Assembly: GCF_006345805.1 (NCBI RefSeq)
Contig: NW_021824576.1
Location: 1 to 17,949, forward strand
Direction of reading: 5' to 3'
Origin: Octopus sinensis
Taxonomy: Eukaryota
Length of the DNA stretch: 17,949 nt
Part shown: positions 1-17,949 of the stretch, one piece after another
Layout of the letters: each line of letters begins with the position of its first letter
Numbering within the stretch: position 1 is the first letter of the stretch
Notes under the pieces: model-generated
What the model saw: the letters and a program-made list of their open reading frames with translations, nothing else
Database searches by the model: none
What the model was told of the DNA's origin: nothing
Made by a program: the position numbers and the translations under genes

Positions 1-152
1 CACTCATGGAGTGGTTGGCGTTAGGAAGGGCATCCAGCTGTAGAAACCTTGCCAGATCAGACTGGAGCCTGGTGCAACCTCCATGGCTTCCCAGACCCCG
101 GTCGAACCGTCCAACTCATGCTAGCATGGAAAACAGACATTAAATGATGATG
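1..152 (+). mobile_element. 3' end of an RTE-family LINE (or RTE-tailed non-autonomous element), continuing off the left edge
   Basis: Colinear and highly similar to 4483-4640, the 3' UTR end of the RTE in this window. It shares GGCGTTAGGAAGGGCATCCAGCTGTAGAAAC, the CATGC-NN-GCATG hairpin (116-129) and a (TGA)n tail, then runs into TA-rich sequence. Confidence 0.85.
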
Positions 153-1052
153 ATATATATAAAATATATACATACGATATTAAATATGTACATATATACG
201 CAAAGTTACTACATGAGTACCTATGTCGCTAAAGATAGAAGTCAAAAAATACTTCTGTATCACCGAATAGTCACAAATCTATGTAATAGCGATTTAGGTA
301 CTCATGTAGTACCCTTGTGTATGTATGTACATATCTAATATCGTATGTATATATTTTATTAATTTGCCTGTACGGCTAATAATTCGCTTACCACTTGTGA
401 TGGTATTTTAATAATACCATCCCTATATTTATGTATATATAGGGAGAGGTCATGAAAAAAACAGAAGACGAAGACAGGTGGTGTAGAAAACAAACAGATG
501 TATTAGTATAACGCTCAGGAATTGAAAAAAGTCTTATGTTTCGAGCCTACGCTCTTCTACAGAAAGGGACACAGAAAAAACAAGGAGAGAAAAAAATGTG
601 TGTAAATTGGGTCGGTGCATAATTATTGTGGCTTTTTTCAACATTTTATTCAATAAAAACATCTTTAAATGATTATTCCGGAGCATATTCACCATCCACT
701 TCAATTACTGTTTCCCATTTGCTTGGGAGACAGTCAGACCATCATTCAAAGATGGTTTTGTTAAATATTGTCGTTTTTGTTGAAAAAAGCCGCAATAATT
801 ATGCACCAACCTAATATAAATAAACGTATTGACAGAGGGGAGAAACCATATCAGTGAGATGTCTGTAGTAAAAACCATTCTCTCCAAGAATTCACTTAAC
901 TCTAAAGAAACATATTCAAACAGAGAAATAACAGAATGAATGTCAAGATTGAAGTTGTGCTAAATAAAGTCCTTCATATTTGTGAATCAAATTGGTTTTT
1001 CTCTTTGGTAGAAAAAGTAATTTTATGAATATAAACAATTTGCTGTGAGCAA

Positions 1053-1293: not shown

Positions 1294-1682
1294 TAGGCGC
1301 AGGAGTGGCTGTGTGGTAAGTAGCTTGTTTACCAACCACATGGTTCCGGGTTCAGTCCCACTGCGTGGCACCTTGGGCAAGTGTCTTCCACTATAGCCTC
1401 GGCCCGACCAAAGCCTTGTGAGTGGATTTGGTAGACGGAAACTGAAAGAAGCCCGTCGTGTATATGTATATGTGTGTGTCTGTGTTTGTCCCCCTAGCAT
1501 TGCTTGACAACCGATGCTGGTGTGTTTACGTCCCCGTCACTTAGCGGTTTGGCAAAAAAGACCGATAGAATAAGTACTAGGCTTACAAAAAAGAATAAGT
1601 CCCGGGGTCGAGTTGCTCGATTAAAGGCGGTGCTCCAGCATGGCCGCAGTCAAATGACTGAAACAAGTAAAAGAGTAAAGAG
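1294..1682 (+). mobile_element. tRNA-derived SINE, apparently full length
   Basis: Pol III A box TGGCTGTGTGG (1306-1316) and B box GGTTCAGTCC (1349-1358). Also a CCTTGGGCAAGT core-like motif, an internal TA/TG microsatellite (~1459-1486) and an A-rich end. A second copy lies on the minus strand at 10959-11330. Confidence 0.88.
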
Positions 1683-2028: not shown

Positions 2029-4185
2029 GAAATAGAAGGGGATACAGCTTCACATGGTGTAGAAGACAAGTGGAAGTTTCTACGGGACAACCTGCTGAGG
2101 GCCACTGACCAGATCTGTGGACGGTGCAAAGTCCCTTCTCGACCCAACATAATGTGGTGGTGGAACAATGTTGTAGACAGGGCTATTAGAGACAAGAGAC
2201 AGGCTTGGAAGAATGGTGGTAGCAGGGAAGTGTATCAGACTGCGAAAAGAGAAGCTAGGAGGCAGGTTTATTTAGCCAGAGGGGAAGCAGATAAAAAATT
2301 TACCAATGTTCTGCACTGTGAGGACCAAAGACTTGAGGTATTTCGTGTTGCAAGACAGTGTGTGAGAGAGAAACGTGATGTGGTAGGAGAGAAATGTGTT
2401 CGCATGGATGATGGTTCACTTGCGCTGAATGAGGATGCAAAGAGAGAGGTTTGGAGATGCCACTATGAAAGGTTGCTCAACAAAGAGAATGAATGGGATA
2501 AAGAGAGTCTGCCGAATGTCGACCCAATAGAGGGACCAGCTATCCGAGTTGACAGTGCCTTGGTAGATAAGGCAATTAGAAGCCTGAAGACAGGGAAAGC
2601 CCCAGGCCATCAGGAATTACTGCAGAGATGCTCAAAATATCTGGCAGTGTCAGCTATAGCCTAGTCACCCGTATAGTTAATCAGGTGATACACGAAGGAG
2701 TCATACCCAATGACTGGTGTAGCAGTATAATAGTCAACTGCTACAAAGGTAAAGGCGACACCCTTGATACAAATAATTACAGAGGTATCAAGCTGTTGGA
2801 TCAGGTAATGAAGGTTACGGAGAGGGTCATAAGCCAACTAATTAGAGAGAGAGTTAGTTTAGATGAGATGCAGTTTGGATTCGTGCCAGGGAAAAGCAAC
2901 ACCGATGCCATATTCCTGGTAAGACAGCTGCAGGAGAAATATCTAGCCAAAGATAAGCCCCTGTACCTGGCTTTCGTTGACATGGAGAAAGCTTTCGACA
3001 GGGTCCTCTGATCCCTTATCTGGTGGTCAATGAGGAAACTAGGGATAGATGAATGGTTAGTGAGAGCTATGCAAGCCATGTACAGGGACGCTGCTAGTAA
3101 GGTGAGGGTTGGCAACGAGTACAGTGAAGAATTCCGGGTAGAGGTAGGGTCCACCAAGGTTCAGCCCTCATCCCCTTCCTATTTATCGTAGTCCTTCAGG
3201 CAATAACGGAGGAATTCAAGACAGGAAGCCCCTGGGAGCTCCTCTATGCTGATGACCTTGCTCTAATTGCTGAGTCGCTATCAGAACTGGAGGAGAAGTT
3301 TCATGTGTGGAAGCAAGGATTAGAATCAACCTAGCCAAAACCAAAGTCCTAATAAGTAGGAAGGTAGACCAATCACAAACACCTTCAGGTAGATGGCCCT
3401 GCTCGATCTGTAGAAAAGGTGTAGGTAGAAACTCTATAAGATGTACCCAGTGTAAGCTATGGACACATAAGAGGTGCAGCAACGTCAAGGGAAGGCTAAC
3501 CAGGAAGATAGTTTTTGTATGTGGCAGATGCTCAGGAGCAATAAACACTGAAAATGCTCTGAGACCAACTTCCGTCACTTTCCAGGGAGAAAAACTAGAA
3601 GTAATTGATAGCTTCCGTTACCTAGGTGACCAAGTCAGTAGTGGGGGTGGGTGTGCTGAAAGTGTAACTGCTAGAGTAAGAATAGCCTGGGCAAAGTTCA
3701 GAGAGATCTTACCTCTGCTGGCGATAAAGGGCCTCTCGTTCAGAGTAAAAGGCAGACTGTATGACGCATGTGTACAAACAGCCATGCTACATGGCAGTGA
3801 AACATGGGCTGTGACTGCTGAGGATATGCGTAAGCTCACAAGAAATGAAGCCAGTATGCTCCGATGGATGTGTAATGTCAGTGTTCATACTCGGCAGAGT
3901 GTAAGTACCTTGAGAGAAAAGCTGGACCTAAGAAGCATCAGTTGCGGTGTGCAAGAGAGACGTTTGCGCTGGTATGGCCATGTGGCGAGAATGGATGAAG
4001 ATAGTTGTGTGAAAAAGTGCCACACCCTAGCTGTTGAGGGAATCTGTGGAAGAGGCAGACCCAGGAAGACCTGGGATGAGGTGGTGAAGCACGACCTTCG
4101 AACATTAGGTCTCACTGAGGAGATGACTAGAGACCGAGACCTATGGAAGTATGCTGTGTGCGAGAAGACCCAGCAGGACAAGTGA
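2029..4185 (+). pseudogene. Disrupted RTE ORF (reverse transcriptase with PHD-finger insertion)
   Basis: The ORF-track pieces 2152-2664, 2628-3011 and 3307-4185 join into one RT protein. Lesions: 1-nt loss at ~2607-2608, TGA at 3009-3011 (where RTE proteins read DRVPR), 1-nt loss at ~3147-3149, and a frameshifting deletion at ~3328. Confidence 0.9.
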
Positions 4186-4332
4186 GACCATCACCCATGG
4201 CTTCAGTCCACTTATGCATACCTTTCCTTCTTGGGACACAAAACCCTACTTGTGAAGACCTGTTGAGGCAAGAGAAAATCAAAAATCAAAATCGATCAAC
4301 ATGAATGGAAATTGTCGCTGTGATTCAGTGCT

Positions 4333-4480
4333 GGTGGCACATAAGAAAAGCATCCGATCGTGGCCGTTTGCCATCCTCGACTGGCCTCCTTGCCGGTGGC
4401 ATGTAAAAAGCACCATCCGACCTTGGCCGTTTGCCAGACTTGTATGGCACCTGTGCAGGTGGCACGTAAAAAGCACCCAC
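4333..4480 (+). repeat. Three diverged ~62-bp tandem sub-repeats in the RTE 3' UTR
   Basis: GGTGGCA(C/T)RTAA..AAAAGCA starts at 4333, 4395 and 4458. The first two units also share TCCGA..TGGCCGTTTGCCA. Confidence 0.75.
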
Positions 4481-4623
4481 TGCACTCACGGAGTTGTTGG
4501 CGTTAGGAAGGGCATCCAGCTGTAGAAACACTGCCAGATCAGACTGGAGCCTGGTGCAGCCTTCTGGCTTCCCAGACCCCAGTTGAACCATCCAACCCAT
4601 GCCAGCATGGAAAGCGGACACTG

Positions 4624-4724
4624 AATGATGATGATGATGATGTATATATATATGTATATATATGTGTGTATATATGTATGTTGTATATATATATATATAT
4701 ATCTATATATATATATATATATAT
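4624..4724. repeat. (ATG)n tail plus (TA)n/(TATG)n microsatellite between the two LINE 3' ends
   Basis: Read directly from the sequence. Confidence 0.95.
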
Positions 4725-6525
4725 TACTTAGATATGTTTCGACCAAGATTGGTCAGGCCATGTCTAACTTAATAGCACCACCTGATAGGATTATTCGAAT
4801 CCTGTTTAAGTCAAGTTTTGTTCAAGTAGTGAGTTCTTGTTGGGTGAGTTGTATCCAATTATGGGTGGCTTATCTGGTATTCTTTGAAGGAATCTATCCA
4901 GACTCTGTTTAAAGTTGATGGGATCCTTTTCCTCTTTGATCTCCCTCGGGACAATGTTAAATAGGGCAGGGCCTGTTGAGGAAAAGAAATTATGTTGCAG
5001 TGTACATGTATGTTGTGATCTTGAATTTGGCAGGGGACGTATAGCCCGTGGTCCAAGTCTTGGATGAACCTTGAAGCTAATGTTTAGGTCATTTGGGCAA
5101 AGTTGGCGGTATATTTTCCACATTGTACAAATGATGTACCGCTCACGGCGACGCTGGAGGGAGTAAAGTTTCAAGGTTTTAAGGCGATCCCAATAATCGA
5201 GAGCAGCCATGCCTTCAATTTGTTTAGTGAGAGCCCTCTGGGGTGACTCAATTCTGGAGATGTTTTGTCTTGTGTGAGGAGACCACAGTGGGCAGCAGTA
5301 TTCAAGGTGTGGCCGTACAAAGGAGGAAAAAAGTGGTATGATGACACCTTGTTCTCTGGACCGGAAAGTTTTTAAGATCCAGGAACTCATCCTACGAGCT
5401 ATATCGACCTTCTTGTTGATGTGTGCACTCCAACTGAGATCGTCATCAACAATTACACCCAGGTCTCTGATATTGTTAGAGGCTGTGAGCGGTTCCCCTG
5501 AAGGAAGAGAGTATGGCTGTTTTAGTGAGGAGTTTCTTCCAAAATGCATCAGCTCAAATTTTCCCTCGTTCAGTTGCATTTTGTTTCTGTTTGCCCATTG
5601 ACTCACAGCATATAGGTCAGACTGGAGTTGAGTTCGGTCTGCTTCTTCATTGATGATTTGCTGGAGCTTAGTGTCATCAGCGAATATTTTCACTTTGCAG
5701 TGATGTACGACACTGGAAAGGTCGTTTACGTAAATTATGAAGAGTAGCAGACCCAAAACAGTTCCCTGGGGATCACCGCTGGTGACTTTTGCTGGGTTTG
5801 AGTGTTCTATTCGCCAGGAAATACTGTATCCAGTGTAGAACTTTTCCACGGATTCCAGCATTTGCCAATTTTGAGAGTAGGATGTTATGGTCTACCCTGT
5901 CGAACGCTTTACTGAAGTCAAGGTATATGACGTCAGAGTTCGAACCTGTTCCCAAGGCTTTGAGTACATCTTCAATGTGGTGTAAGAGCTGTGTTAGACA
6001 GTCCCTGCCACAGCGAAAGCCATGCTGATTTGCATTTAGGAGTTTGTGGGTCTCCAGGAAGTCAGCTATCCTTGATCTTAACACTCTTTCAAACACTTTA
6101 ATGATGTGGGAGGTGAGTGAGATTGGGCGATAGTTGACTGCGAGGGATCTGTTTCCCTGTTTGAAAACCGGGATGACCGACTGGGATAGAAACTGTTTCA
6201 GTATATAACCTGCGTCTAACGAATTTCTCCAGAGGTTGGTCAGAGGGACTGCAAGTTGATATCTACATTCCTTCAGGAGGCTAGCGGGAAATCTATCAGG
6301 GCCTACAGCGGAGTAATGTTTGACCTCATTTATTGCTGCTACGATGTCGGTGGCAGTGAAGGTTATGTCTGAGATTGTGTGTTGGGAGTCAACTTCGTTC
6401 GTTTCCCTTACGTCAATATCAGTGGGAACACTGAAGACAGAGCAGCAGTATTGTGTCTGCAGCATTTCTGCCATTTCTTTAGCATCGTGTTGGGGAATGC
6501 CGTTATCATCAATCAATGGCCCAAT
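4725..6525 (-). mobile_element. 5'-truncated, inactivated CR1-group LINE (RT, C-terminus, short 3' UTR)
   Basis: Minus-strand ORFs 5773-6543 and 4806-5861 give IGPLIDDNG..MAEML, GPDRF, NYRPISLTS, NQHGFR, YLDFSKAFDRVDH, SG(D)PQGTVLG(L)LLF, FADD (5673-5684), RDLGV, VRPHLEY and LYSLQRRRERY. Stop at ~4806; the short 3' UTR ends at a (TA)n tract. Confidence 0.9.
4806..6525 (-). pseudogene. Disrupted CR1-group ORF2 (reverse transcriptase)
   Basis: A frame switch at ~5803-5806 joins FLANRT directly to HSNPAKVTSG, where CR1 RTs normally have an intervening Q.V.V.G-type segment. Conserved residues are changed (SGVPQG to SGDPQG, LGPLLF to LGLLLF). Confidence 0.85.
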
Positions 6526-6575
6526 ATATATATAAACACACATATATATTTATGTATGTATGTATAATATATATA

Positions 6576-6651: not shown

Positions 6652-6776
6652 GGGGTAGAAAATATTTTAGTGGAGAAACACATGGTGGATATATATAAAA
6701 TGAGAAGAGATGAGAAACCAGAAGATTTGTTCACAGGATTTAGGGGTATATTAGAGCCATGGAAAAAAAAATATCT

Positions 6777-7233
6777 AATTTTGTACAAAATAAGGTTTTG
6801 TCCTTCCAAATAATTGAAGGACCGGTTTCGAGTTGCTTATCAAACTGAGAGTTGAAAGAAAAAGATTTATAATTTTGTACAAATAAGGTTTTGTCCTTTC
6901 CAAATAATTGAAAGGACCGGTTTCGAGTTGCTTATCAAACTGAGAGTTGAAAAAAAAAGATTTATAATTTTGTACAAAATAAGGTTTTGTCCTTTCAAAA
7001 TAATTGAAGGACCGGTTTCGAGTTGCTTATCAAACTGAGAGTTGAAAGAAAAGGATTTTAATTTTGTACAAAAAAGGTTTTGTCCTTTCCAAATAATTGA
7101 AGGACCGGTTTCGAGTTGCTTATCAAACTGAGAGTTGAAAGAAAAAGATTATAATTTTGTACAAAATAAGGTTTTGTCCTTTCCAAATAATTGAAGGACC
7201 GGTTTCGAGTTGCTTATCAAACTGAGAGTTGAA
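6777..7233. repeat. Tandem array of ~94-bp units, ~4.9 near-identical copies
   Basis: AATTTTGTACAAA starts at 6777, 6871, 6966, 7060 and 7153 (periods 94, 95, 94, 93). Differences are mostly homopolymer length. Confidence 0.95.
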
Positions 7234-7749: not shown

Positions 7750-8069
7750 TTAAATAAACTCAAAACACATAGTTTAAAAGACATATAACACTGCTTATCT
7801 CAGTGTGATTGTCTGAAAAATAGACTCTCCTTCTGCTTCAGATGTGGGGTAATTATTAGGGGTATTATTAGCAGAAATCTCACCGAATTACTCATAAAAA
7901 AAAAAAAAAGCAAAACTGAATTTTGGGGTAGCAAGGAAAATTTTCATTCAGCATAAGTAATTATTTTTAGATTTTAACTTATCCTACACTTGAAGAGAAT
8001 CAACCAGTGTTCTTTCTAGAAATGTGATATAAGTGAATTCAAAGACCCATCTTCTACAAAATGACGATG

Positions 8070-8115
<46 letters not shown>

Positions 8116-8129
8116 TAATAATAATAATA
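8070..8129. repeat. (AAT)n microsatellite
   Basis: About 20 AAT units with one AAC interruption. Confidence 0.97.
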
Positions 8130-8474: not shown

Positions 8475-8856
8475 GGACCTCAACACAAGACTAAACTCCT
8501 CACAGTAACTTTCCTTCCATTTACTTTCAATGTGCTCTGGTAGACACAAGCTTTATCACAAGCAAACCAGAGAATGTCTTGCATTAGAACTGGCACCAGC
8601 CCTATATTTTTCAAGAACCTAGTGAGAGGGGTAAGCAAGAGGATCTCGAATCTGTCTCGAACCAAGATAGCTTTGACGCTGCTGCCCCTTTCTACAATGA
8701 GGCACTGGCATGGAGTGGATTTAAGGACTGCCTCTCCTACATGCCAGGCCCTGACACCAGGAAAGGAAGCGCCGCAGAAATGTCTTTTGGTTTGCTCCAC
8801 CCTTCTCGCTTAACATCGAAACTTGTGTGGGAAAGATTTTCCTGAGGAAATATTTC
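8475..8856 (+). pseudogene. Decayed Penelope-like element fragment: RT C-terminus/thumb and linker
   Basis: Frameshifted segments read TVTFLPFTFNV / SGRHKLYHK / KNLVRGVSKRISNLS / DSFDAAAPFYNEALAWSGFKDCLSY / RKRRRNVFWFAPPFSLNIETCVGKIFL (8764-8844). This matches the PLE pattern I recall (VNFLDVT..YKPYxKP..ISKRISxLS..FxxAAPxYNxAL..SGF..KRxRNIIWFNPPFS..TNIGKxFL). Confidence 0.75.
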
Positions 8857-8871
8857 AGGGTTATTTTTCTA

Positions 8872-8916
8872 ATCATCATCATCGTTTTAACATCTCTTTT
8901 TCCATGCTTGCATGGG
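8872..8916 (-). mobile_element. Very short RTE-type 3' tail
   Basis: Reverse complement CCCATGCAAGCATGGAAAAAGAGATGTTAAAACGATGATGATGAT matches the tails at 113-152 and 4596-4641. Confidence 0.75.
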
Positions 8917-8974
8917 TCAGACAAAAGCACATTAGGAGCACTCGGCCGGTTATGACAACATTTGTTTCTTTTGA

Positions 8975-9100
8975 TCTGATCAATGGAACAGCCTGCTCAT
9001 GAAGTTAATGCACAAGTGGCTGAGTACTCCACAGACACACATACCCTTAATGTAGTTCACAGGGAGATTCAGCATAACATACACAATATGACAGGGCTAG
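8975..9100 (+). mobile_element. Possible fragment of another interspersed repeat (SINE 3' portion)
   Basis: Resembles an octopus repeat I recall, unverified. Its distal part (~9045-9097) has weak reverse-complement similarity to ~1240-1287 in this window. Confidence 0.3.
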
Positions 9101-10958: not shown

Positions 10959-11129
10959 GCCATGCTGGAGCAACCGCCTCTAGTCGACCAAATTGACCCC
11001 GGGACTATATTCTTTGTAAGCCAGTACTTATTCTATCGGTCTCTTATGCCGAACCGCTAATTGACGGGGACGTAAAACACACCAGCATCTGTTGTCAAGC
11101 AATGCTAAGGGGACAAACACAGACACAAA

Positions 11130-11162
<33 letters not shown>

Positions 11163-11330
11163 CATATATACGACAGGCTTCTTTCAGTTTCCGTCTACCA
11201 AATCCACTCACAAGGCATTGGTCGGCCCGGGGCTATAGCAGAAGACACTTGCCCAAGATGCCACGCAGTGGGACTGAACCCGGAACGATGTGGTTGGTTA
11301 GCAAGCTATTTACCACCCAGCCACTCCTAT
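10959..11330 (-). mobile_element. tRNA-derived SINE, same family as 1294-1682, opposite orientation
   Basis: Minus-strand A box TGGCTGGGTGG (11313-11323) and B box GGTTCAGTCC (11271-11280). Colinear with 1294-1645, with a longer internal CA/TA tract (~11116-11169). Flanked by (TA)n on both sides. Confidence 0.9.
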
Positions 11331-11526
11331 GTTTATTATATATATATATATATATATATGTATGCATGTATATATATATATGTATATATTAATCCATATA
11401 AGGGTAGCAAAAAATTCAATAGAAATTTTTGGGCCACCAGCGGTCGAGTGAGAAAGAGAAAATAGTCACAGACTATATATATAAATTCAACACACATATA
11501 TACATGCATATATCTATATATTATCA

Positions 11527-11673
11527 ATTCAAAACATTAAGGAACGGCCCTGATAGGCCATGTTTTTAAATTTTCCTTCATTTCTTAATTATTACTGTTT
11601 TGCGGTTTGAGTATTGGCTGCTCTTTTAGTGGGTCGAATGACCTATCAGGGCCGTTCCTTAATGTTGTTGAAT
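11527..11673. mobile_element. Foldback element / MITE with ~35-bp terminal inverted repeats
   Basis: ACATTAAGGAACGGCCCTGATAGG (11534-11557) is the perfect reverse complement of CCTATCAGGGCCGTTCCTTAATGT (11642-11665). The match extends to ATTCAA...TTGAAT with one indel. Confidence 0.8.
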
Positions 11674-11760
11674 ATATATATATATATATGCATGTATAGT
11701 GTGTGTGTGTCTGTGTCTGTGTGTATGCAATATGTATATATGCATGCATGTATGTATATT
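11674..11760. repeat. Compound TA/TG/TATG microsatellite
   Basis: Read directly from the sequence. Confidence 0.9.
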
Positions 11761-11823
11761 AAAAGTCCTGTACACTCTGTAAATGTATATAAATAATCTA
11801 TGTTCATACAATACTAAATACAC

Positions 11824-14800
11824 CGTTTTGTTCATCTGGTCTTGTGGTGATAGCCGTGGCAGGAATCAAAGGGGAATGGTTCGGAAGTGTGGTTGGGAAG
11901 TGTAGGAGATAGTATAGAGGTGGTGTGATGTTGTGGTGGTGGTGGTGGTGGTGGTGAGGTTGGCTGTGGAGGTTATGAACATAATGCCAGGAGTGCTTGT
12001 GTATGGGCTGTGGTTGTTGTTGTTGGTGGTGGTGGTGGTGGTGGTTGTGGTAGCTGCGGTGGAGGTACTGGTGACAGTGGGGGTGGTGGTGGTGGCTGCG
12101 GTGGAGGTAGTGGTGACAGTGGGGGTGGTGGTTGTGGCTGCGGTGAGGAGTACTGGTGACAGTGGTGGTGGTGGTGGTAGCTGCGGTGGAGGTACTGGTG
12201 ACAGGGGGGTGGTGGTGGTGGCTGCGGTGGAGGTAATGGTGACAGTGGTGGTGGTGGTGGTGGTTGTGGCTGCGGTGGAGGTAATGTGACAGTGGTGGTG
12301 GTGGTTGTGGTCGGTGGTGGTTAGTGGTGGTAATGGTGACAGTGGGGGGTGGTGGGTGGTGGTGGGTGCGGTGGAAGGTACTGGTGACAGTGGGGTGGTG
12401 GTGGGGCTGCGGTGGAGGTAGTGGTGACAGTGGTGGTGGTGGTTGTGGCTGCGGTGGAGGTACTGGTGACAGTGGTAGGTGGTGGTTGTGGCTGCGGTGG
12501 AGGTAATGGTGACAGTGGTGTGGGTGGTGGTGGCTGCGGTGGAGGTGCTGGTGACAGTGGTGGTGTGGTGGTGGTGGCTGCGGTGGAGGTACTGGTGACA
12601 GTGGTGGTTTTTGGTGGTTGGGGCTGGGGCTGCGGGTGGAGGTAGTTGGTGACAGGTGTGGTGTGGTGGTGGGGTGGTGGCTGCCGGTGGAGGTAATGGT
12701 GACAGTGGTGGTGGTGGTTGTGGCTCGTGTGGTGGAGGTAATGGTGACAGGGGGGTGGTGAGGTGTGGGCTGTTGTGGAAGGTGTGGAGGGTAGTGGGAC
12801 AGAGGGGGGGTGGTTGGTGGTGGTGGCTGCGGTGGAGGTTATGGTGACAGTTGTGGTGGTGGTGGTGGCTTGGCGGTGGAGGTAGTGGTGACGATGACGG
12901 TGGTGGGTTTGGTGGTGGTGGCTGCGGTGGAGGTATGGTGCAGGTGGGGTGTGGTGGGTGTGGTTGTGGTGGTGGTGGGATCTGGTGGAGGTAATGGTGA
13001 CAGTGGGGGGGTGGTGGTTTGGGCTGCGGTGGGGTAATGGTGACAGTGGGGGTGGTGGTGGTGTGGCTGCGGTGGAGGTAATGGGACAGTGGTGTTGTGG
13101 TTGTGGCTGGGTGGACTCGTGGTAATGGTGACAGTGGTGGTGGTGGTGTGGCTGCGGTGGAGGTACTGGTGACAGTGGGGGTGGGTGGTGGGTGAGCTGC
13201 GGTGGAGGTACTGGTGACAGTTGGTGGTGGTGTTTGTGGCCGCGGGTGGAGCCGTGGGTGTGGTGACAGTGGTTGGGGGTGGTGGTGGCAGTCTGCGGTG
13301 GAGTAAGGCGTAGTGGTGACAGTGGTGGTGGTGGTGGTGGGCGGTGGAGGTACTGGTGACAGTGGGGGTGGTGGTGTGGCTGTGGTGGAGGTAATGGTGA
13401 CAGTGGTGGTGGTGGTTGTGGCTGCGGTGGAGGTAGTGGTGACAGTGGGGGTGGTGGTTGTGGCTGCGGTGGAGGTACTGTGACAGTGGGGGTGGTGGTG
13501 GTGGTTGTGGGCGGTGGAGGTAATGGTGACAGTGGTGGTGGTGGTTGTGGCTGGGTGGAAGGTAATGGTGACAGTGGTGGTGTGGTGGTGGTGGCTGCGG
13601 TGGAGGTAATGGTGACAGTGGTGGTGGTGGTTGTGGCTGCGGGGTAGGTACTGGTGACCAGTGGTGGTGGTGGTGGTGGCTGCGGTGGAGGGTCTGGTGA
13701 CAGTGGGGGTGGGTGGTGGTGGCTGCGGTGGAGGTAATGGTGACAGTGGTTGGGGGTGGTTGTGGCTGTGGTGGAGGTAATGGTGACAGTGGTGGTGGTG
13801 TTGTGGCCGCGGTGGAAGGTAGTGGTGACAGTGGGGGGGTGGTTGGTGTGGCTGCGGTGGAGGTACTGGTGACAGTGGTGGTGGTGTTGTGGCTGCGGTG
13901 GAGGAGGTACTGGTGACAGTGGTGGTGGTGGTGTGGCTGCGGTGGAGGTCGTGGTGACAGTGGGGGTGGTGGTTGTGGCTGCGGGTGGAGGTACTGGTGA
14001 CAGTGGTGGTGGTGGTGGTGGCTGCGGTGTGGAGGTAGTGGTGACAGTGGTGGTGGTGGTGGTGGCTGCGGTGGAGGTAATGGTGACAGTGGTGGTGGTG
14101 GTGGTGGTGGCTGCGGTGAGGTACTGGTGACAGTTGGTGGTGGTGTTGTGGCCGCGGTGCGTGGGAGGTAAGTGGTGGACAGTGGGGTGGTGGTTGTGGC
14201 TGCGGTGGAGGTAGTGGGAGTGGTGACAGTGGGGGGGTGGTTGTTTTGTGGCTGCCGGTGGAGGTAATGGTGACAGTGGGGTGGTGGTGGTGGCTGCGGT
14301 GGAGGTATGGTGACAGTGGTGGTGGTGGTGGTGGCTGCGGTGGAGGTAATGGTGACAGTGGTGGTGGTGGTGGTGGCTGCGGTGGAGGTACTGGTGACAG
14401 TGGTGGTGGTGGTTGTGGCTGCGGTGGAGGTACTGGTGACAGTGGGGGTGGTGGTGGTGGCTGCGGTGGAGGTAATGGTGACAGTGGGGGTGGTGGTGGT
14501 GGCTGCGGTGGAGGTAATGGTGACAGTGGGGTGGTGGTTGTGGCTGCGGTGGAGGTAATGGTGACAGTGGTGGTGGTGGTTGTGGCTGCGGTGGAGGTAC
14601 TGGTGACAGTGGTGGTGGTGGTTGTGGCTGCGGTGGAGGTAATGGTGACAGTGGTGGTGGTGGTTGTGGCTGCGGTGGAGGTAATGGTGACAGTGGGGGT
14701 GGTGGTTGTGGCTGCGGTGGAGGTACTGGTGACAGTGGTGGTGGTGGTTGTGGCTGCGGTGGAGGTAATGGTGACAGTGGTGGTGGTGGTGGTGGTTGTG

Positions 14801-17800
14801 GTGGAGGTACTGGTGACAGTGGTGGTGGTGGTGGTGGCTGCGGTGGAGGTAATGGTGACAGTGGTGGTGGGGTGTGGTTGTGGTGTGGGAGGTATGGTGA
14901 CAGTGGTGTGGTGGTTGGTGGCTGCGGTGGAGGTAATGGTGACAGTGGTGGTGGTGGTTGTGGCTGCGGTGGAGGTAATGGTGACAGTGGTGGTGGTGGT
15001 GGTGGTTGTGGTGGAGGTACTGGTGACAGTGGTGGTGGTGGTGGTGGCTGTGGTGGAGGTACTGGTGACAGTGGTGGTGGTGGTGGTGGGCTGCGGTGGA
15101 GGTAATGGTGACAGTGGGGTGGTGGTGGTGGCTGCGGTGGAGGTAATGGTGACAGTGGTGGTGGTGGTGGTGGTTGTGGCTGCGGTGGAGGTACTGGTGA
15201 CAGTGGTGGTGGTGGTGGTGGCTGCGGTGGAGGTACTGGTGACAGTGGTGGTGGTGGTTGTGGCTGCGGTGGAGGTAGTGGTGACAGTGGGGGTGGTGGT
15301 GGTGGCTGCGGTGGAGGTAATGGTGACAGTGGTGGTGGTGGTGGTGGTGGTGGCTGCGGTGGAGGTAGTGGTGACAGTGGTGGTGGTGGTGGTGGCTGCG
15401 GTGGAGGTACTGGTGACAGTGGGGGTGGTGGTGTTGGTTGGTTGTGGTGCGGTGGAGGTGGTGCGGTGGACAGTGGTGTTGGTGTGGTGGTGGTGGTGGT
15501 GGCTGCGGTGGAGGTACTGGTGACAGTGGTGGTGGTGGTGGTGGCTGCGGTGGAGGTACTGGTGACAGTGGTGGTGGTGGTGGTGGCTGCGGTGGAGGTA
15601 GTGGTGACAGTGGGGGTGGTGGTGGTGGCTGCGGTGGAGGTAATGGTGACAGTGGTGGTGGTGGTTGTGGCTGCGGTGGAGGTAATGGTGACAGTGGTGG
15701 TGGTGGTGGTGGTTGTGGCTGCGGTGGAGGTACTGGTGACAGTGGTGGTGGTGGTGGTGGCTGCGGTGGAGGTACTGGTGACAGTGGTGGTGGTGGTGGT
15801 GGCTGCGGTGGAGGTAATGGTGACAGTGGTGGTGGTGGTGGTGGCTGCGGTGGTAGTGGTGACAGTGGGGTGGTGGTGGTGGCTGCGGTGGAGGTAGTGG
15901 TGACAGTGGGGGTGGTGGTGGTGGCTGCGGTGGAGGTAATGGTGACAGTGGGGGTGGTGGTTGTGGCTGCGGTGGAGGTAATGGTGACAGTGGGGTGGTG
16001 GTGGTGGTGGTTGTGTGGCTGCGGTGGAGGTACTGGTGACAGTGGTGGTGGTGGTGGTGGTGGTGGGGCTGCGGTGGAGGTACTGGTGACAGTGGTGGTG
16101 TGGTGGTGGTGGCTGCGGTGGAGGTAGTGGTGACAGTGGGGGTGGTGGTGTGGCTGCGGTGGAGGTAATGGTGACAGTGGTGTGGTGGTGGTGGTGGTGG
16201 CTGCAGTGGAGGTACTGGTGACAGTGGTGGTGGTGGTTGTGGCTGCGGTGGAGGTAGTGGTGACAGTGTGGTGGTGGTGGGTGGCTGCGGTGGAGGTAAT
16301 GGTGACAGTGGTGGTGGTGGTGGTGGTGGTGGCTGCGGGGAGGTAGTGGTGACAGTGGGGGTGGTGGTGGTGGCTGCGGTGGAGGTACTGGTGACAGTGG
16401 GGGTGGTGGTGGTGGCTGCGGTGGAGGTAATGGTGACAGTGGTGGTGGTGGTTGTGGCTGTGGTGGAGGTAATGGTGACAGTGGGGGTGGTGGTTGTGGC
16501 TGTGGTGGAGGTAATGGTGACAGTGGTGGTGGTGGTGGTGGCTGTGGTGGAGGTAATGGTGACAGTGGGGGTGGTGGTGGTGGCTGCGGTGGAGGTACTG
16601 GTGACAGTGGGGGTGGTGGTGGTGGCTGTGGTGGAGGTAATGGTGACAGTGGGGGTGGTGGTGGTGGCTGCGGTGGAGGTAATGGTGACAGTGGGGGTGG
16701 TGGTTGTGGCTGCGGTGGAGGTACTGGTGACAGTGGTGGTGGTGGTTGTGGCTGCGGTGGAGGTAATGGTGACAGTGGTGGTGGTGGTGGTGGCTGCGGT
16801 GGAGGTAATGGTGACAGTGGTGGTGGTGGTGGTGGCTGCGGTGGAGGTAGTGGTGACAGGTGGGGTGGTGGTGGTGGGCTGCGGTGGAGGTAATGGTGAC
16901 AGTGGTGGTGGTGGTTGTGGCTGCGGTGGAGGTAACTGGTGACAGTGTGGTGGTGGTTGTGGCTGCGGTGGAGGTAGTGGTGACAGTGGTGGTGGTGGTG
17001 GTGGCTGCGTGGAGGTAGTGGTGACAGTGGGGTGGTGGTGTGGCTGCGGTGGAGGTAATGGTGACAGTGGTGGGTGGTGGTGGTGGCTGCGGTGGAGGTA
17101 GTGGTGACAGTGGGGGTGGTGGTGGTGGCTGCGGTGAGGTAATGGTGACAGTGGTGGTGGTGGTGGTTGGCTGCGGTGGAGGTAATGGTGACAGTGGGTG
17201 GTGGTGGTGGTGGCTGGGGGGTGGGGTAGTGGTGACAATTGGTGGTGGTGGTGGTGGCTGCGGTGGAGGTAATGGTGACAGTGGTGGTGGTGGTGGTGGC
17301 TGCGGTGGAGGTAATGGTGACAGTGGTGGTGGTGGTTGTGGCTGGCGGTGGAGGTATGGTGACAGTGGGGGTGGTGGTGGTGGCTGCGGGGTGGAGGTGG
17401 TGACAGTGGGGGTGGTTGGTGGTGGCCTGCGGTGGAGGTAGTGGTGACAGTGGTGGTGGTGGTGGTGGCTGCGGTGGAGGATACGTGGTGACAGTGGTGG
17501 GTGGTGTGGTGGCTATGCGCGGTGGAGGATAGTGGTGACAGTGGGTGGTGGTGGTATGGGGCTGCGGTGGAGTAGTGGTGACAGTGGTGGTGTTGGTGGT
17601 GGCTGCGTGTGGAGGTAACTGGTGACAGTGGTGGTGGTGGTGGTAGCTGCGGTGAGAGGTACTGGTGACAGTGGTTGGTGGTGTGGGTGCTGCGGTGGAG
17701 GTACTGGTGACAGTGGTGGTGGTGGTGGGTGGCTGCGGTGGAGGTACTGGTGACAGTGGTGGTGGTGGTGGCTGCGTGTGAGAGGTACTGGTGACAGTTG

Positions 17801-17949
17801 GTGGTGGTTGTGGCTCGCGGTGGAGGTATTGGTGCACAGTGGTGTTGGTGGTGGTGGCTTGCGTGGAGGTAGTGGTGACAGTGGGGGGTGTGGTGGTGGC
17901 TGCGGTGGAGGTACTGGTGACAGTGGTGGTGGTGGTGTTGGCTGCGGTG
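11824..17949 (-). CDS. Candidate large repetitive exon of a Thr/Ser/Pro-rich mucin-like protein (unit TVT(I/S/T)TSTAATTT(T/P)); reading frame broken by indels in this assembly
   Basis: The minus-strand ACC frame uses almost only T/S/A/V/I/P. Thr/Ser/Pro-rich sequence continues into the non-repetitive end (SPYTSTPGIMFITSTANLTTTT), and composition switches abruptly to AT-rich after a GT at 11823-11822. No signal peptide or folded domain is visible, so coding status and strand are unproven. Confidence 0.4.
12030..17949. repeat. Large tandem array, modal unit ~42 nt: (GGT)n-GGC-TGC-GGT-GGA-GGT-A(A/C/G)T-GGT-GAC-AGT; roughly 140 copies by length/period; continues past the window end
   Basis: The GGTGACAGT and GCTGCGGTGGAGGTA anchors recur throughout. 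Period is 42 at e.g. 14557/14599/14641, and unit length varies mainly by GGT triplets. Confidence 0.97.

What the first reader, a model, noticed from the sequence alone, without database searches (positions are those of the whole stretch)
11824..17949. More than 6 kb VNTR that looks like a giant mucin-type PTS exon
Seen: about 140 copies of a ~42-nt unit. In the ACC frame of the minus strand they encode TVT(I/S/T)TSTAATTTT(T/P), and the common unit variants (I/S/T, T/P, A/T) stay within the O-glycosylation-type alphabet. Established: large single-exon PTS VNTRs are typical of mucins and are poorly assembled and annotated. Inference: this could be an unannotated secreted or membrane mucin with a >2000-residue glycosylated stalk, possibly length-polymorphic. 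Triplet-wise length variation is also expected from GGT slippage alone, so it does not prove coding.
Basis: partly seen in the sequence, partly recalled or inferred. Interest (0 to 1): 0.7.

Follow-up and report, generated by a model that had tools for sequence, protein, structure and literature searches.

The report
Long 42-base G-rich tandem array
About 140 head-to-tail copies of a 42-base unit really are there, but apart from a threonine-rich translation nothing I could test supports a mucin gene, and the simplest reading is an ordinary non-coding, GGT-derived minisatellite in repeat-rich animal DNA.

Summary
Tandem Repeats Finder gives one array at 12035-17949, period 42, 138.6 copies, with two or three degenerate units from about 11918. 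It runs off the right end of the window. Exact-length units do translate on the minus strand to VT(I/S/T)TST(A/T)ATTTT(T/P)T.

The mucin reading is not established:
- A perfect unit has no stop codon in five of its six frames, so open frames mean nothing here.
- As assembled, the register changes frame 64 times. The longest in-frame run is 13 units.
- The unit is a diverged (GGT)14 block, matching at 33 of 42 bases. That explains the 14-codon length without any coding.
- The plus-strand glycine-rich frame fits the common unit variants at least as well.
- I found no related protein, no Pfam domain, no consensus splice donor and no nearby poly(A) signal.
- The left flank is a mosaic of LINE fragments, SINE-like and MITE-like elements and microsatellites.

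The frameshifts resemble long-read consensus noise, so they do not refute coding either.

Best reading: a non-coding, G-quadruplex-prone minisatellite or satellite (0.55). A mucin-like exon remains possible (about 0.28). The decisive data are transcripts, accurate reads, and the sequence to the right. None was available here.

The parts
11918..12034 (.). Degenerate leading edge of the array: two to three diverged units separated by about 40 nt of non-repeat sequence
   Evidence: Read directly. The wrap-around alignment bins show 18% substitutions and 13% indels here.
12035..17949 (.). 42-nt tandem array, about 139 copies. The G-rich strand is + (GC skew about 0.76) and the C/A-rich strand is -. 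It is cut by the window end.
12035..14249 (.). Noisy left part of the array: the same unit variants as the core plus scattered single-base indels and substitutions
   Evidence: Together with the right noisy part it holds 205 non-consensus events in about 3.2 kb.
14250..17000 (.). Clean core: runs of up to 13 perfect 42-nt units. Length variants are mostly whole ACC/GGT triplets (48-nt units) or one C missing from a C run.
   Evidence: 48 events in 2.75 kb.
17001..17949 (.). Noisy right part of the array, ending inside a unit at the last base of the window

Best explanation
This is a non-coding tandem array: either a single-locus minisatellite (VNTR) or one block of a satellite. It descends from a (GGT)n/(ACC)n triplet microsatellite.

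Proposed origin (inferred):
- A block of 14 mutated triplets became the unit of amplification.
- It expanded by replication slippage and unequal exchange or gene conversion.
- Those processes keep the units alike and shuffle four common variant sites into nearly all combinations.
- The pure (GGT)6 tract inside each unit still slips by whole triplets.

Consequences (inferred):
- The G-rich strand can form two-tetrad G-quadruplexes almost continuously. In known G-rich minisatellites this favours replication stalling and length instability, so the array is probably length-polymorphic.
- The threonine-rich translation is a by-product of ACC being the complement of GGT.
- The many single-base indels are most likely consensus errors of a long-read assembly that could not traverse or polish the array.

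Shown directly: the array, its GGT ancestry, the strand asymmetry, the variant shuffling, and the repeat-rich flank. Inferred: the absence of coding, the amplification mechanism, the polymorphism, and the technical origin of the noise.
For: - The unit matches (GGT)14 at 33/42 positions. Shuffles give 21.7 +/- 1.5, with a maximum of 28. TRF also reports a period-6 TGGTGG reading over the same span.
- Five of the six frames of a perfect unit are open, so openness carries no information.
- There are 64 frame changes as assembled.
- Of the four common variants, only one is synonymous in the Thr frame and two are synonymous in the plus-strand Gly frame. One variant is a CpG-to-CpA change.
- Rare substitutions are synonymous at 0.337, against 0.325 expected at random.
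- The four variant sites occur in about 17 of 24 combinations with no higher-order period.
- There are 306 two-tetrad G4 motifs in the array, against 12 in the 11.8-kb flank.
- No homologous protein was found among the candidates scored, and none in metagenome contigs. No Pfam family was found.
- There is no GTRAGT or AG|GTR donor between 12040 and 11211 on the minus strand. The nearest AATAAA is at 11337, and all three minus frames stop within about 230 nt of the array end.
- The flank consists of LINE reverse-transcriptase fragments, two dispersed SINE-like families, a MITE-like inverted repeat, other tandem repeats and microsatellites.
Against: - The architecture is exactly that of a mucin VNTR exon: a 14-codon unit, high homogeneity, strong strand asymmetry, and more than 70% Thr+Ser in one frame.
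- The frame breaks may be technical, so a continuous frame is not excluded.
- The protein searches are weak for low-complexity queries. The word index was capped at 8000 candidates, and the exhaustive phmmer job never returned.
- TE-rich flanks are equally typical of introns in a large, repeat-rich genome.
- No transcript data were consulted.
- I could not check whether the unit occurs at other loci.
Confidence: 0.55

Rival explanations
1. This is the first reader's idea: the array is the central exon, or part of it, of a minus-strand gene for a secreted or membrane mucin-like protein. Its tandem TVT(I/S/T)TST(A/T)ATTTT(T/P) repeats would be densely O-glycosylated. On this reading the frameshifts in the window are assembly errors.
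For: - The unit is 14 codons, and the idealised frame is 61% T, 9% S, 12% A and 4% P. That passes the Thr+Ser and repeat-number criteria used for mucin mining (PMC2515642).
- In-frame length variants of 48 and 39 nt occur in the clean core.
- 42 of the 97 single-base insertions do not duplicate a neighbouring base.
- The noisy parts carry the same variant-site frequencies as the clean core.
- Several core frameshifts are a C lost from a C run. This is the error type reported for SMRT consensus of true mucin VNTRs (PMC9712336).
Against: - No single frame exists as assembled.
- Proline is about 2-4%, below the 5% threshold quoted in PMC2515642.
- There is no homologue and no VWD, SEA, EGF or other domain in the window.
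- There is no donor site or poly(A) signal where the frame ends, and no synonymous excess.
- The Thr codons are almost all ACC, as in a microsatellite.
- The multiple-of-3 unit length is explained by GGT ancestry.
- PTS composition without VWD or SEA domains is stated to give false positives (PMC1552070).
Confidence: 0.28
2. The array codes on the plus strand for a glycine- and cysteine-rich repeat protein with unit SGGGGGGCGGG(N/T/S)GD. This would resemble glycine-rich structural proteins. The gene would run rightward out of the window.
For: - The frame is open in a perfect unit.
- Two of the four common variants are synonymous in this frame: TGC/TGT and GGT/GGG.
- The idealised composition is 65% G, 10% C, 8% S and 7% D.
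- Plus-strand ORFs of up to 428 aa exist in the clean core.
Against: - The plus strand carries 66-99 stops per frame over the array as assembled.
- There is no Pfam family.
- No acceptor-like site was found in 11501-12040, and there is no convincing start upstream of the array.
- It has the same frame instability as the minus strand.
- The synonymous excess rests on only four sites.
Confidence: 0.05
3. This reading is assembly artefact. A shorter real array would have been inflated, or several arrays chimerically joined, by a long-read assembler. Copy number and internal order would then not be real.
For: - The window ends inside the array.
- Non-consensus event density is uneven along it: 1.7% in the core against 6.4% in the outer parts.
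- Inserted bases look random.
Against: - The unit variants are diverse and are not a simple duplication of a block. No higher-order period or repeated haplotype string was seen.
- The left junction to unique flank is clean.
- An array of some kilobases must exist to produce such reads.
Confidence: 0.07

Closest known systems
G-rich hypervariable minisatellites of vertebrates (for example human CEB1, MS1, MS32). This comparison is from my own knowledge and was not tested here.
   Same: - Units of tens of bases and arrays of kilobases.
- Strong G/C strand asymmetry and G-quadruplex potential.
- Interspersed unit variants, and triplet or unit-level slippage.
   Different: - Here the unit is visibly a decayed (GGT)14 block, so it keeps a period of 3 and translates without stops.
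- Length polymorphism and single-locus status could not be tested.
Mucin VNTR exons, such as the human MUC1, MUC2 and MUC4 tandem-repeat domains, rodent Muc10 (39-bp units; PMC9417175) and the Drosophila mucins mined by PTS repeats (PMC2515642)
   Same: - A unit that is a multiple of three and a large homogeneous array.
- Thr/Ser-rich translation.
- Hard to assemble, and prone to frameshifts in long-read consensus (PMC9712336).
   Different: - No continuous frame as assembled, and low proline.
- Nearly a single Thr codon (ACC).
- No signal peptide, flanking domain, homologue or transcript evidence.
- No exon boundary signal at the only end that is visible.
(GGT)n/(ACC)n triplet microsatellites
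   Same: - 33 of 42 unit positions match (GGT)14.
- A pure (GGT)6 tract inside each unit still varies by whole triplets.
   Different: - The amplified unit is a fixed 42-nt higher-order block with a specific GGCTGCGGTGGAGGTAVTGGTGACAGT segment. It is not a simple triplet run.

Membership tests
Mucin / PTS-domain protein | Thr+Ser content above threshold (at least 20% as quoted in PMC2515642) within a repeat domain | tested here: met
   The idealised Thr frame is 61% T + 9% S. The as-assembled minus frames are 24-37% T+S.
Mucin / PTS-domain protein | Proline content at least 5% (threshold quoted in PMC2515642) | tested here: inconclusive
   Proline is 4.1% in exact-length units, and about 2% from the T/P variant alone (17 of 56 units). 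PMC2515642 notes that its results barely depended on this cut-off.
Mucin / PTS-domain protein | At least 4 tandem repeats | tested here: met
   About 139 units.
Mucin / PTS-domain protein | One uninterrupted reading frame through the repeat domain | tested here: inconclusive
   There are 64 frame changes as assembled. However, the indels look like consensus noise (PMC9712336).
Mucin / PTS-domain protein | Signal peptide, and for classical mucins VWD, SEA or other flanking domains | not testable with these tools
   The 5' side of a minus-strand gene lies beyond the window end. Within the window, array translations and flank ORFs match no Pfam family except RVT_1 and a weak, sub-threshold PHD/C1-like zinc finger in the LINE fragments.
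Mucin / PTS-domain protein | Transcribed, translated and O-glycosylated | not testable with these tools
   No transcriptome or proteome of the source organism was available. No matching predicted protein was found. The exhaustive search did not return.
Minisatellite (VNTR) | Head-to-tail array of units of about 10-100 bp | tested here: met
   Period 42, 138.6 copies.
Minisatellite (VNTR) | Interspersed unit variants without a fixed higher-order period | tested here: met
   There are four variant sites in about 17 combinations. Haplotype identity at lags 1-15 stays at 0.02-0.10.
Minisatellite (VNTR) | Length polymorphism between individuals at a single locus | not testable with these tools
Satellite DNA | The same unit in long arrays at many loci, making up an appreciable fraction of the genome | not testable with these tools
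   There is no copy outside the array in this window, and none in JGI metagenome contigs. The source genome could not be searched.

The most novel reading that the evidence does not exclude
The array could be the repeat exon of an unannotated, very large Thr-rich mucin-like glycoprotein, with more than 1,900 residues of TVTITSTAATTTT-type repeats. The host would be an invertebrate, probably a cephalopod. On this reading the gene was generated by amplification of an ACC-triplet tract and was missed because long-read assemblies break its frame.
Probability: 0.25. Interest if true: 0.45.

Novelty: new member of a known kind. Interest (0 to 1): 0.2.

Why it matters
If it is a plain minisatellite, it matters only in practical ways. 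It marks an assembly breakpoint and a probable hypervariable, G-quadruplex-prone locus. It also shows how GGT/ACC-derived arrays imitate mucin PTS exons in six-frame scans. Any triplet-derived C/A-rich array will look like an open, Thr-rich giant ORF, so composition-based mucin finders need transcript or domain support. If it turns out to be coding, it would add a lineage-specific mucin-like protein that arose from a codon microsatellite. That would fit the published idea that mucin function evolves repeatedly through exonic repeat gain (PMC9417175).

Tried and rejected
- **Protein search with 173 aa of clean Thr-frame repeat.** 8000 word-sharing candidates were scored and none reached E<=0.001. 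The test is weak because the candidate cap is easily saturated by TTTTT words.
- **Exhaustive phmmer search of the 847-aa core translation.** I submitted it and polled it until, and it never finished. I count it as not done.
- **DNA unit and Thr-frame protein against JGI metagenome contigs.** The DNA unit had 0 matches. The protein gave 600 pattern matches, none confirmed.
- **Exact-product look-ups for four window ORFs, including the two giant minus-strand ORFs.** These might have recovered the source contig and extended it rightward. Nothing was on record.
- **Taxon identification.**
  - The reverse-transcriptase ORF hits LINE proteins. The best hit (70%) is on an unnamed 934-bp contig of GCA_024449705.1, and the named hits are ctenophores at 39-50%.
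  - The accession and the SINE strings were not found in the paper library.
  - The SINE-derived ORF had no protein hit.
  - The cephalopod assignment therefore rests only on my memory of the interspersed repeats.
- **Other database and literature searches.** Rfam and tRNA scans found nothing. Literature string searches for the peptide and DNA unit found nothing.
- **ORF length as evidence of coding.** I rejected it because all three minus frames are open by composition.
- **The multiple-of-three unit length as evidence of coding.** I rejected it because of the (GGT)14 ancestry.
- **The noisy ends as old, diverged array edges.** I consider this unlikely, for three reasons:
  - Indels outnumber substitutions.
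  - 43% of single-base insertions are untemplated.
  - Variant-site frequencies equal those of the core.
Full report

Yes. Tandem Repeats Finder reports one array at 12035-17949 with period 42, 138.6 copies, 83% matches and 9% indels. The base composition changes abruptly there. GC rises from about 0.35 to 0.62 and GC skew rises to about 0.76, so the + strand is the G-rich strand.

A 32-nt core of the unit occurs 87 times with at most 3 mismatches. Every match is on the + strand between 12049 and 17926, and none is expected by chance. The array reaches the very last base of the window, in mid-unit.

Two or three degenerate units precede it from about 11918.

The 56 anchor-to-anchor intervals of exactly 42 nt give the minus-strand consensus GTCACCATTACCTCCACCGCAGCCACCACCACCACCACCACT = VTITSTAATTTTTT. 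There are four common variant sites:
- Position 8, T/G/C, giving I/S/T.
- Position 19, G/A, giving A/T. This is a CpG-to-CpA change.
- Position 27, C/A, which is the synonymous ACC/ACA.
- Position 37, A/C, giving T/P.

**2.

*Open frames are uninformative.* Over 11824-17949 the three minus frames have 1, 3 and 2 stops. A perfect unit is also open in two plus frames, SGGGGGGCGGGNGD and VVVVVVAAVEVMVT. Five of six frames are open purely because of composition.

*The frame is not maintained as assembled.* A wrap-around alignment of the whole array to the unit, with the four common variants allowed, gives 5707 matches, 115 substitutions, 227 inserted bases and 96 deleted bases. Grouped into events, there are 97 single-base insertions and 70 single-base deletions. 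The register changes frame 64 times. Units fall 58/42/39 into the three frames, and the longest in-frame run is 13 units. The long minus-strand ORFs of 1790 and 1838 aa are therefore patchworks of TVTITSTAATTTT, LSPLPPPQPPPPPP and HCHHYLHRSHHHHH. Their composition is 16-29% T, 19-32% P and 14-25% H.

*The 14-codon unit length does not need coding.* On the + strand the unit reads AGT GGT GGT GGT GGT GGT GGC TGC GGT GGA GGT AAT GGT GAC. It matches (GGT)14 at 33 of 42 positions. Shuffles give 21.7 +/- 1.5, with a maximum of 28. TRF also sees a period-6 TGGTGG reading across the same span. The unit is a decayed triplet microsatellite block, and ACC (Thr) is simply the complement of GGT.

*The variation does not favour the Thr frame.* Of the four common variants, one is synonymous in the Thr frame. 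Two are synonymous in the plus-strand Gly frame: TGC/TGT and GGT/GGG. Of the 86 rarer substitutions, 0.337 are synonymous in the Thr frame, against 0.325 expected from random change.

**3. Do the frameshifts refute coding?**

No. I think they are mostly technical, although I cannot prove it.
- Events are unevenly spread. A clean core at about 14250-17000 has 48 events in 2.75 kb. The two outer parts have 205 events in about 3.2 kb.
- The outer parts carry the same alleles at the four variant sites in the same proportions as the core. At position 19, A is 16% against 15%. At position 27, A is 31% against 33%. At position 37, C is 36% against 35%. They are therefore the same units plus noise, not older diverged units.
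- Indels outnumber substitutions.
- 42 of 97 single-base insertions do not copy a neighbouring base, so 57% are duplications. Random insertion predicts 44-64%. By my own knowledge, natural slippage would give mostly duplications.
- Several core frameshifts are a C missing from a CCCCC run.

A published re-assembly of human MUC2, MUC5AC, MUC5B and MUC6 repeat domains from SMRT reads reports that its consensus frameshifts all arose at runs of identical bases (PMC9712336). The broken frame is therefore neither evidence for nor against a gene.

**4. Surroundings**

The 11.8 kb to the left is a mosaic of repeats:
- Two LINE-type reverse-transcriptase remnants, each split by frameshifts. One is at 2152-4185 on +, with RVT_1 and a weak PHD/C1-like zinc finger. 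The other is at 4806-6543 on -, with RVT_1.
- A SINE-like family with copies at 1301-1578 (+) and 11023-11328 (-), 89-96% alike.
- A second dispersed family at 1-154 and 4483-4635, 87-94% alike.
- A MITE-like inverted repeat at 11510-11561 / 11638-11689.
- A 94-bp tandem repeat in 5 copies at 6765-7233, a 63-bp repeat at 4328-4477, (ATA)20 at 8070-8129, and many TA/TG microsatellites.

No flank ORF matches any Pfam family other than reverse transcriptase and that zinc finger. Rfam and tRNA scans are empty.

On the minus strand the three frames close at 11868, 11975/11834 and 11806. Between 12040 and 11211 there is no GTRAGT or AG|GTR donor. The only GTGAGT, at 11211, lies inside the SINE-like element. 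The nearest AATAAA is at 11337. On the plus strand no acceptor-like site was found in 11501-12040.

The visible end of the array therefore shows no exon boundary. This is weak evidence, because I used no species-specific splice model. Introns of repeat-rich genomes look just like this flank.

**5. Source organism**

The window is clearly from an animal, given the LINE, SINE and MITE elements and the microsatellites. The reverse-transcriptase ORF finds 753 relatives. The best, at 70% identity, is on a 934-bp contig of GCA_024449705.1. The named hits are ctenophore proteins at 39-50%.

I could not resolve the assembly accession in the literature library. From memory only, the two dispersed elements and their (TA)n(TG)n tails resemble the abundant interspersed repeats of octopus genomes. 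I treat a cephalopod origin as a lead, not a result. String searches in the papers and a protein search with a SINE-derived ORF found nothing.

**6. Searches for relatives of the putative protein**

- A 173-aa clean Thr-frame query gave no hit at E<=0.001 among 8000 word-sharing candidates.
- The same query back-translated against JGI metagenome contigs gave 600 pattern matches, none confirmed.
- The DNA unit was absent from those contigs.
- Pfam found nothing in any array translation on either strand.
- Exact-product look-ups for four window ORFs, which could have recovered and extended the source contig, found nothing.
- The exhaustive phmmer search of the 847-aa core translation was still running when I stopped polling, so it counts as not done.

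These negatives are weak for a low-complexity query.

**7. Interpretation**

The best-supported reading is a non-coding minisatellite, or one block of a satellite, that grew from a (GGT)n microsatellite. A 14-triplet block carrying a few mutations became the unit of unequal exchange and slippage. Homogenisation keeps the units nearly identical, while the four variant sites are shuffled into about 17 of 24 possible combinations without any higher-order period. The internal (GGT)6 tract still gains or loses whole triplets, giving the 48-nt units.

The G-rich strand has 306 two-tetrad G-quadruplex motifs, against 12 in the whole flank. In known G-rich minisatellites, by my own knowledge, this goes with replication trouble and length instability. 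That would also explain why the assembly ends and degrades inside the array. I give this reading 0.55.

The mucin-like exon remains a real possibility at about 0.28. The architecture is exactly that of mucin VNTRs. The idealised frame has 70% Thr+Ser in about 139 repeats, which passes the criteria used to mine mucins. Proline, at 2-4%, is under the 5% threshold quoted in PMC2515642. The authors of PTSpred themselves state that PTS composition without VWD or SEA domains gives false positives (PMC1552070).

A plus-strand Gly/Cys-rich protein (0.05) and an assembly artefact in copy number or order (0.07) are minor rivals.

**8. Novelty and interest**

As a minisatellite this is a new member of a very well-known kind and is of low interest. 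Its main value is as a caution. GGT/ACC-derived arrays will always present as giant open Thr-rich ORFs in six-frame scans.

If it were shown to be coding, it would be a lineage-specific mucin-like protein born from a codon microsatellite. That is in line with repeated de novo mucin evolution by exonic repeat gain (PMC9417175). It would be moderately interesting but not surprising.

Noticed in passing
window 2152-4185 (+) and 4806-6543 (-): Two LINE-type retrotransposon remnants in opposite orientation, each broken into overlapping ORFs by frameshifts. Both have RVT_1. The + copy has a weak, sub-threshold PHD/C1-like zinc finger after the RT. The best relative is 70% identical, on a contig of GCA_024449705.1.
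   Followed up: partly
window 1301-1578 (+) and 11023-11328 (-): Two copies of a SINE-like dispersed element, 89-96% alike, each followed by a (TA)n(TG)n tail. From memory it resembles the abundant octopus interspersed repeat. No tool or paper confirmed this.
   Followed up: partly
window 1-154 and 4483-4635 (+); possibly also about 8823-9002: A second dispersed repeat family, 87-94% alike, ending in (ATG)n then (TA)n. The copy at 1-154 is cut by the window start.
   Followed up: partly
window 6765-7233: A 94-bp tandem repeat in 5 copies with 95% matches, AT-rich, lying directly beside the end of the minus-strand LINE remnant. It may be that element's terminal repeat.
   Followed up: no
window 4328-4477: A 63-bp tandem repeat in 2.4 copies with 77% matches, immediately upstream of the second copy of the dispersed family at 4483.
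   Followed up: no
window 11510-11561 / 11638-11689: A MITE-like inverted repeat with 52-nt arms, 81% complementary and 76 nt apart, whose best-matching stretch is about 20 nt around AAGGAACGGCCCTGATAGG. It lies about 250 nt from the array edge.
   Followed up: no
window 8070-8129: A nearly perfect (ATA)20 microsatellite, which produces a poly-Asn stretch in a spurious ORF.
   Followed up: no
window 14250-17000 versus the rest of the array: The array has a clean core between two noisy stretches, with identical variant-site frequencies in both. This suggests uneven consensus quality of a long-read assembly. If so, the flank may also carry uncorrected indels.
   Followed up: partly
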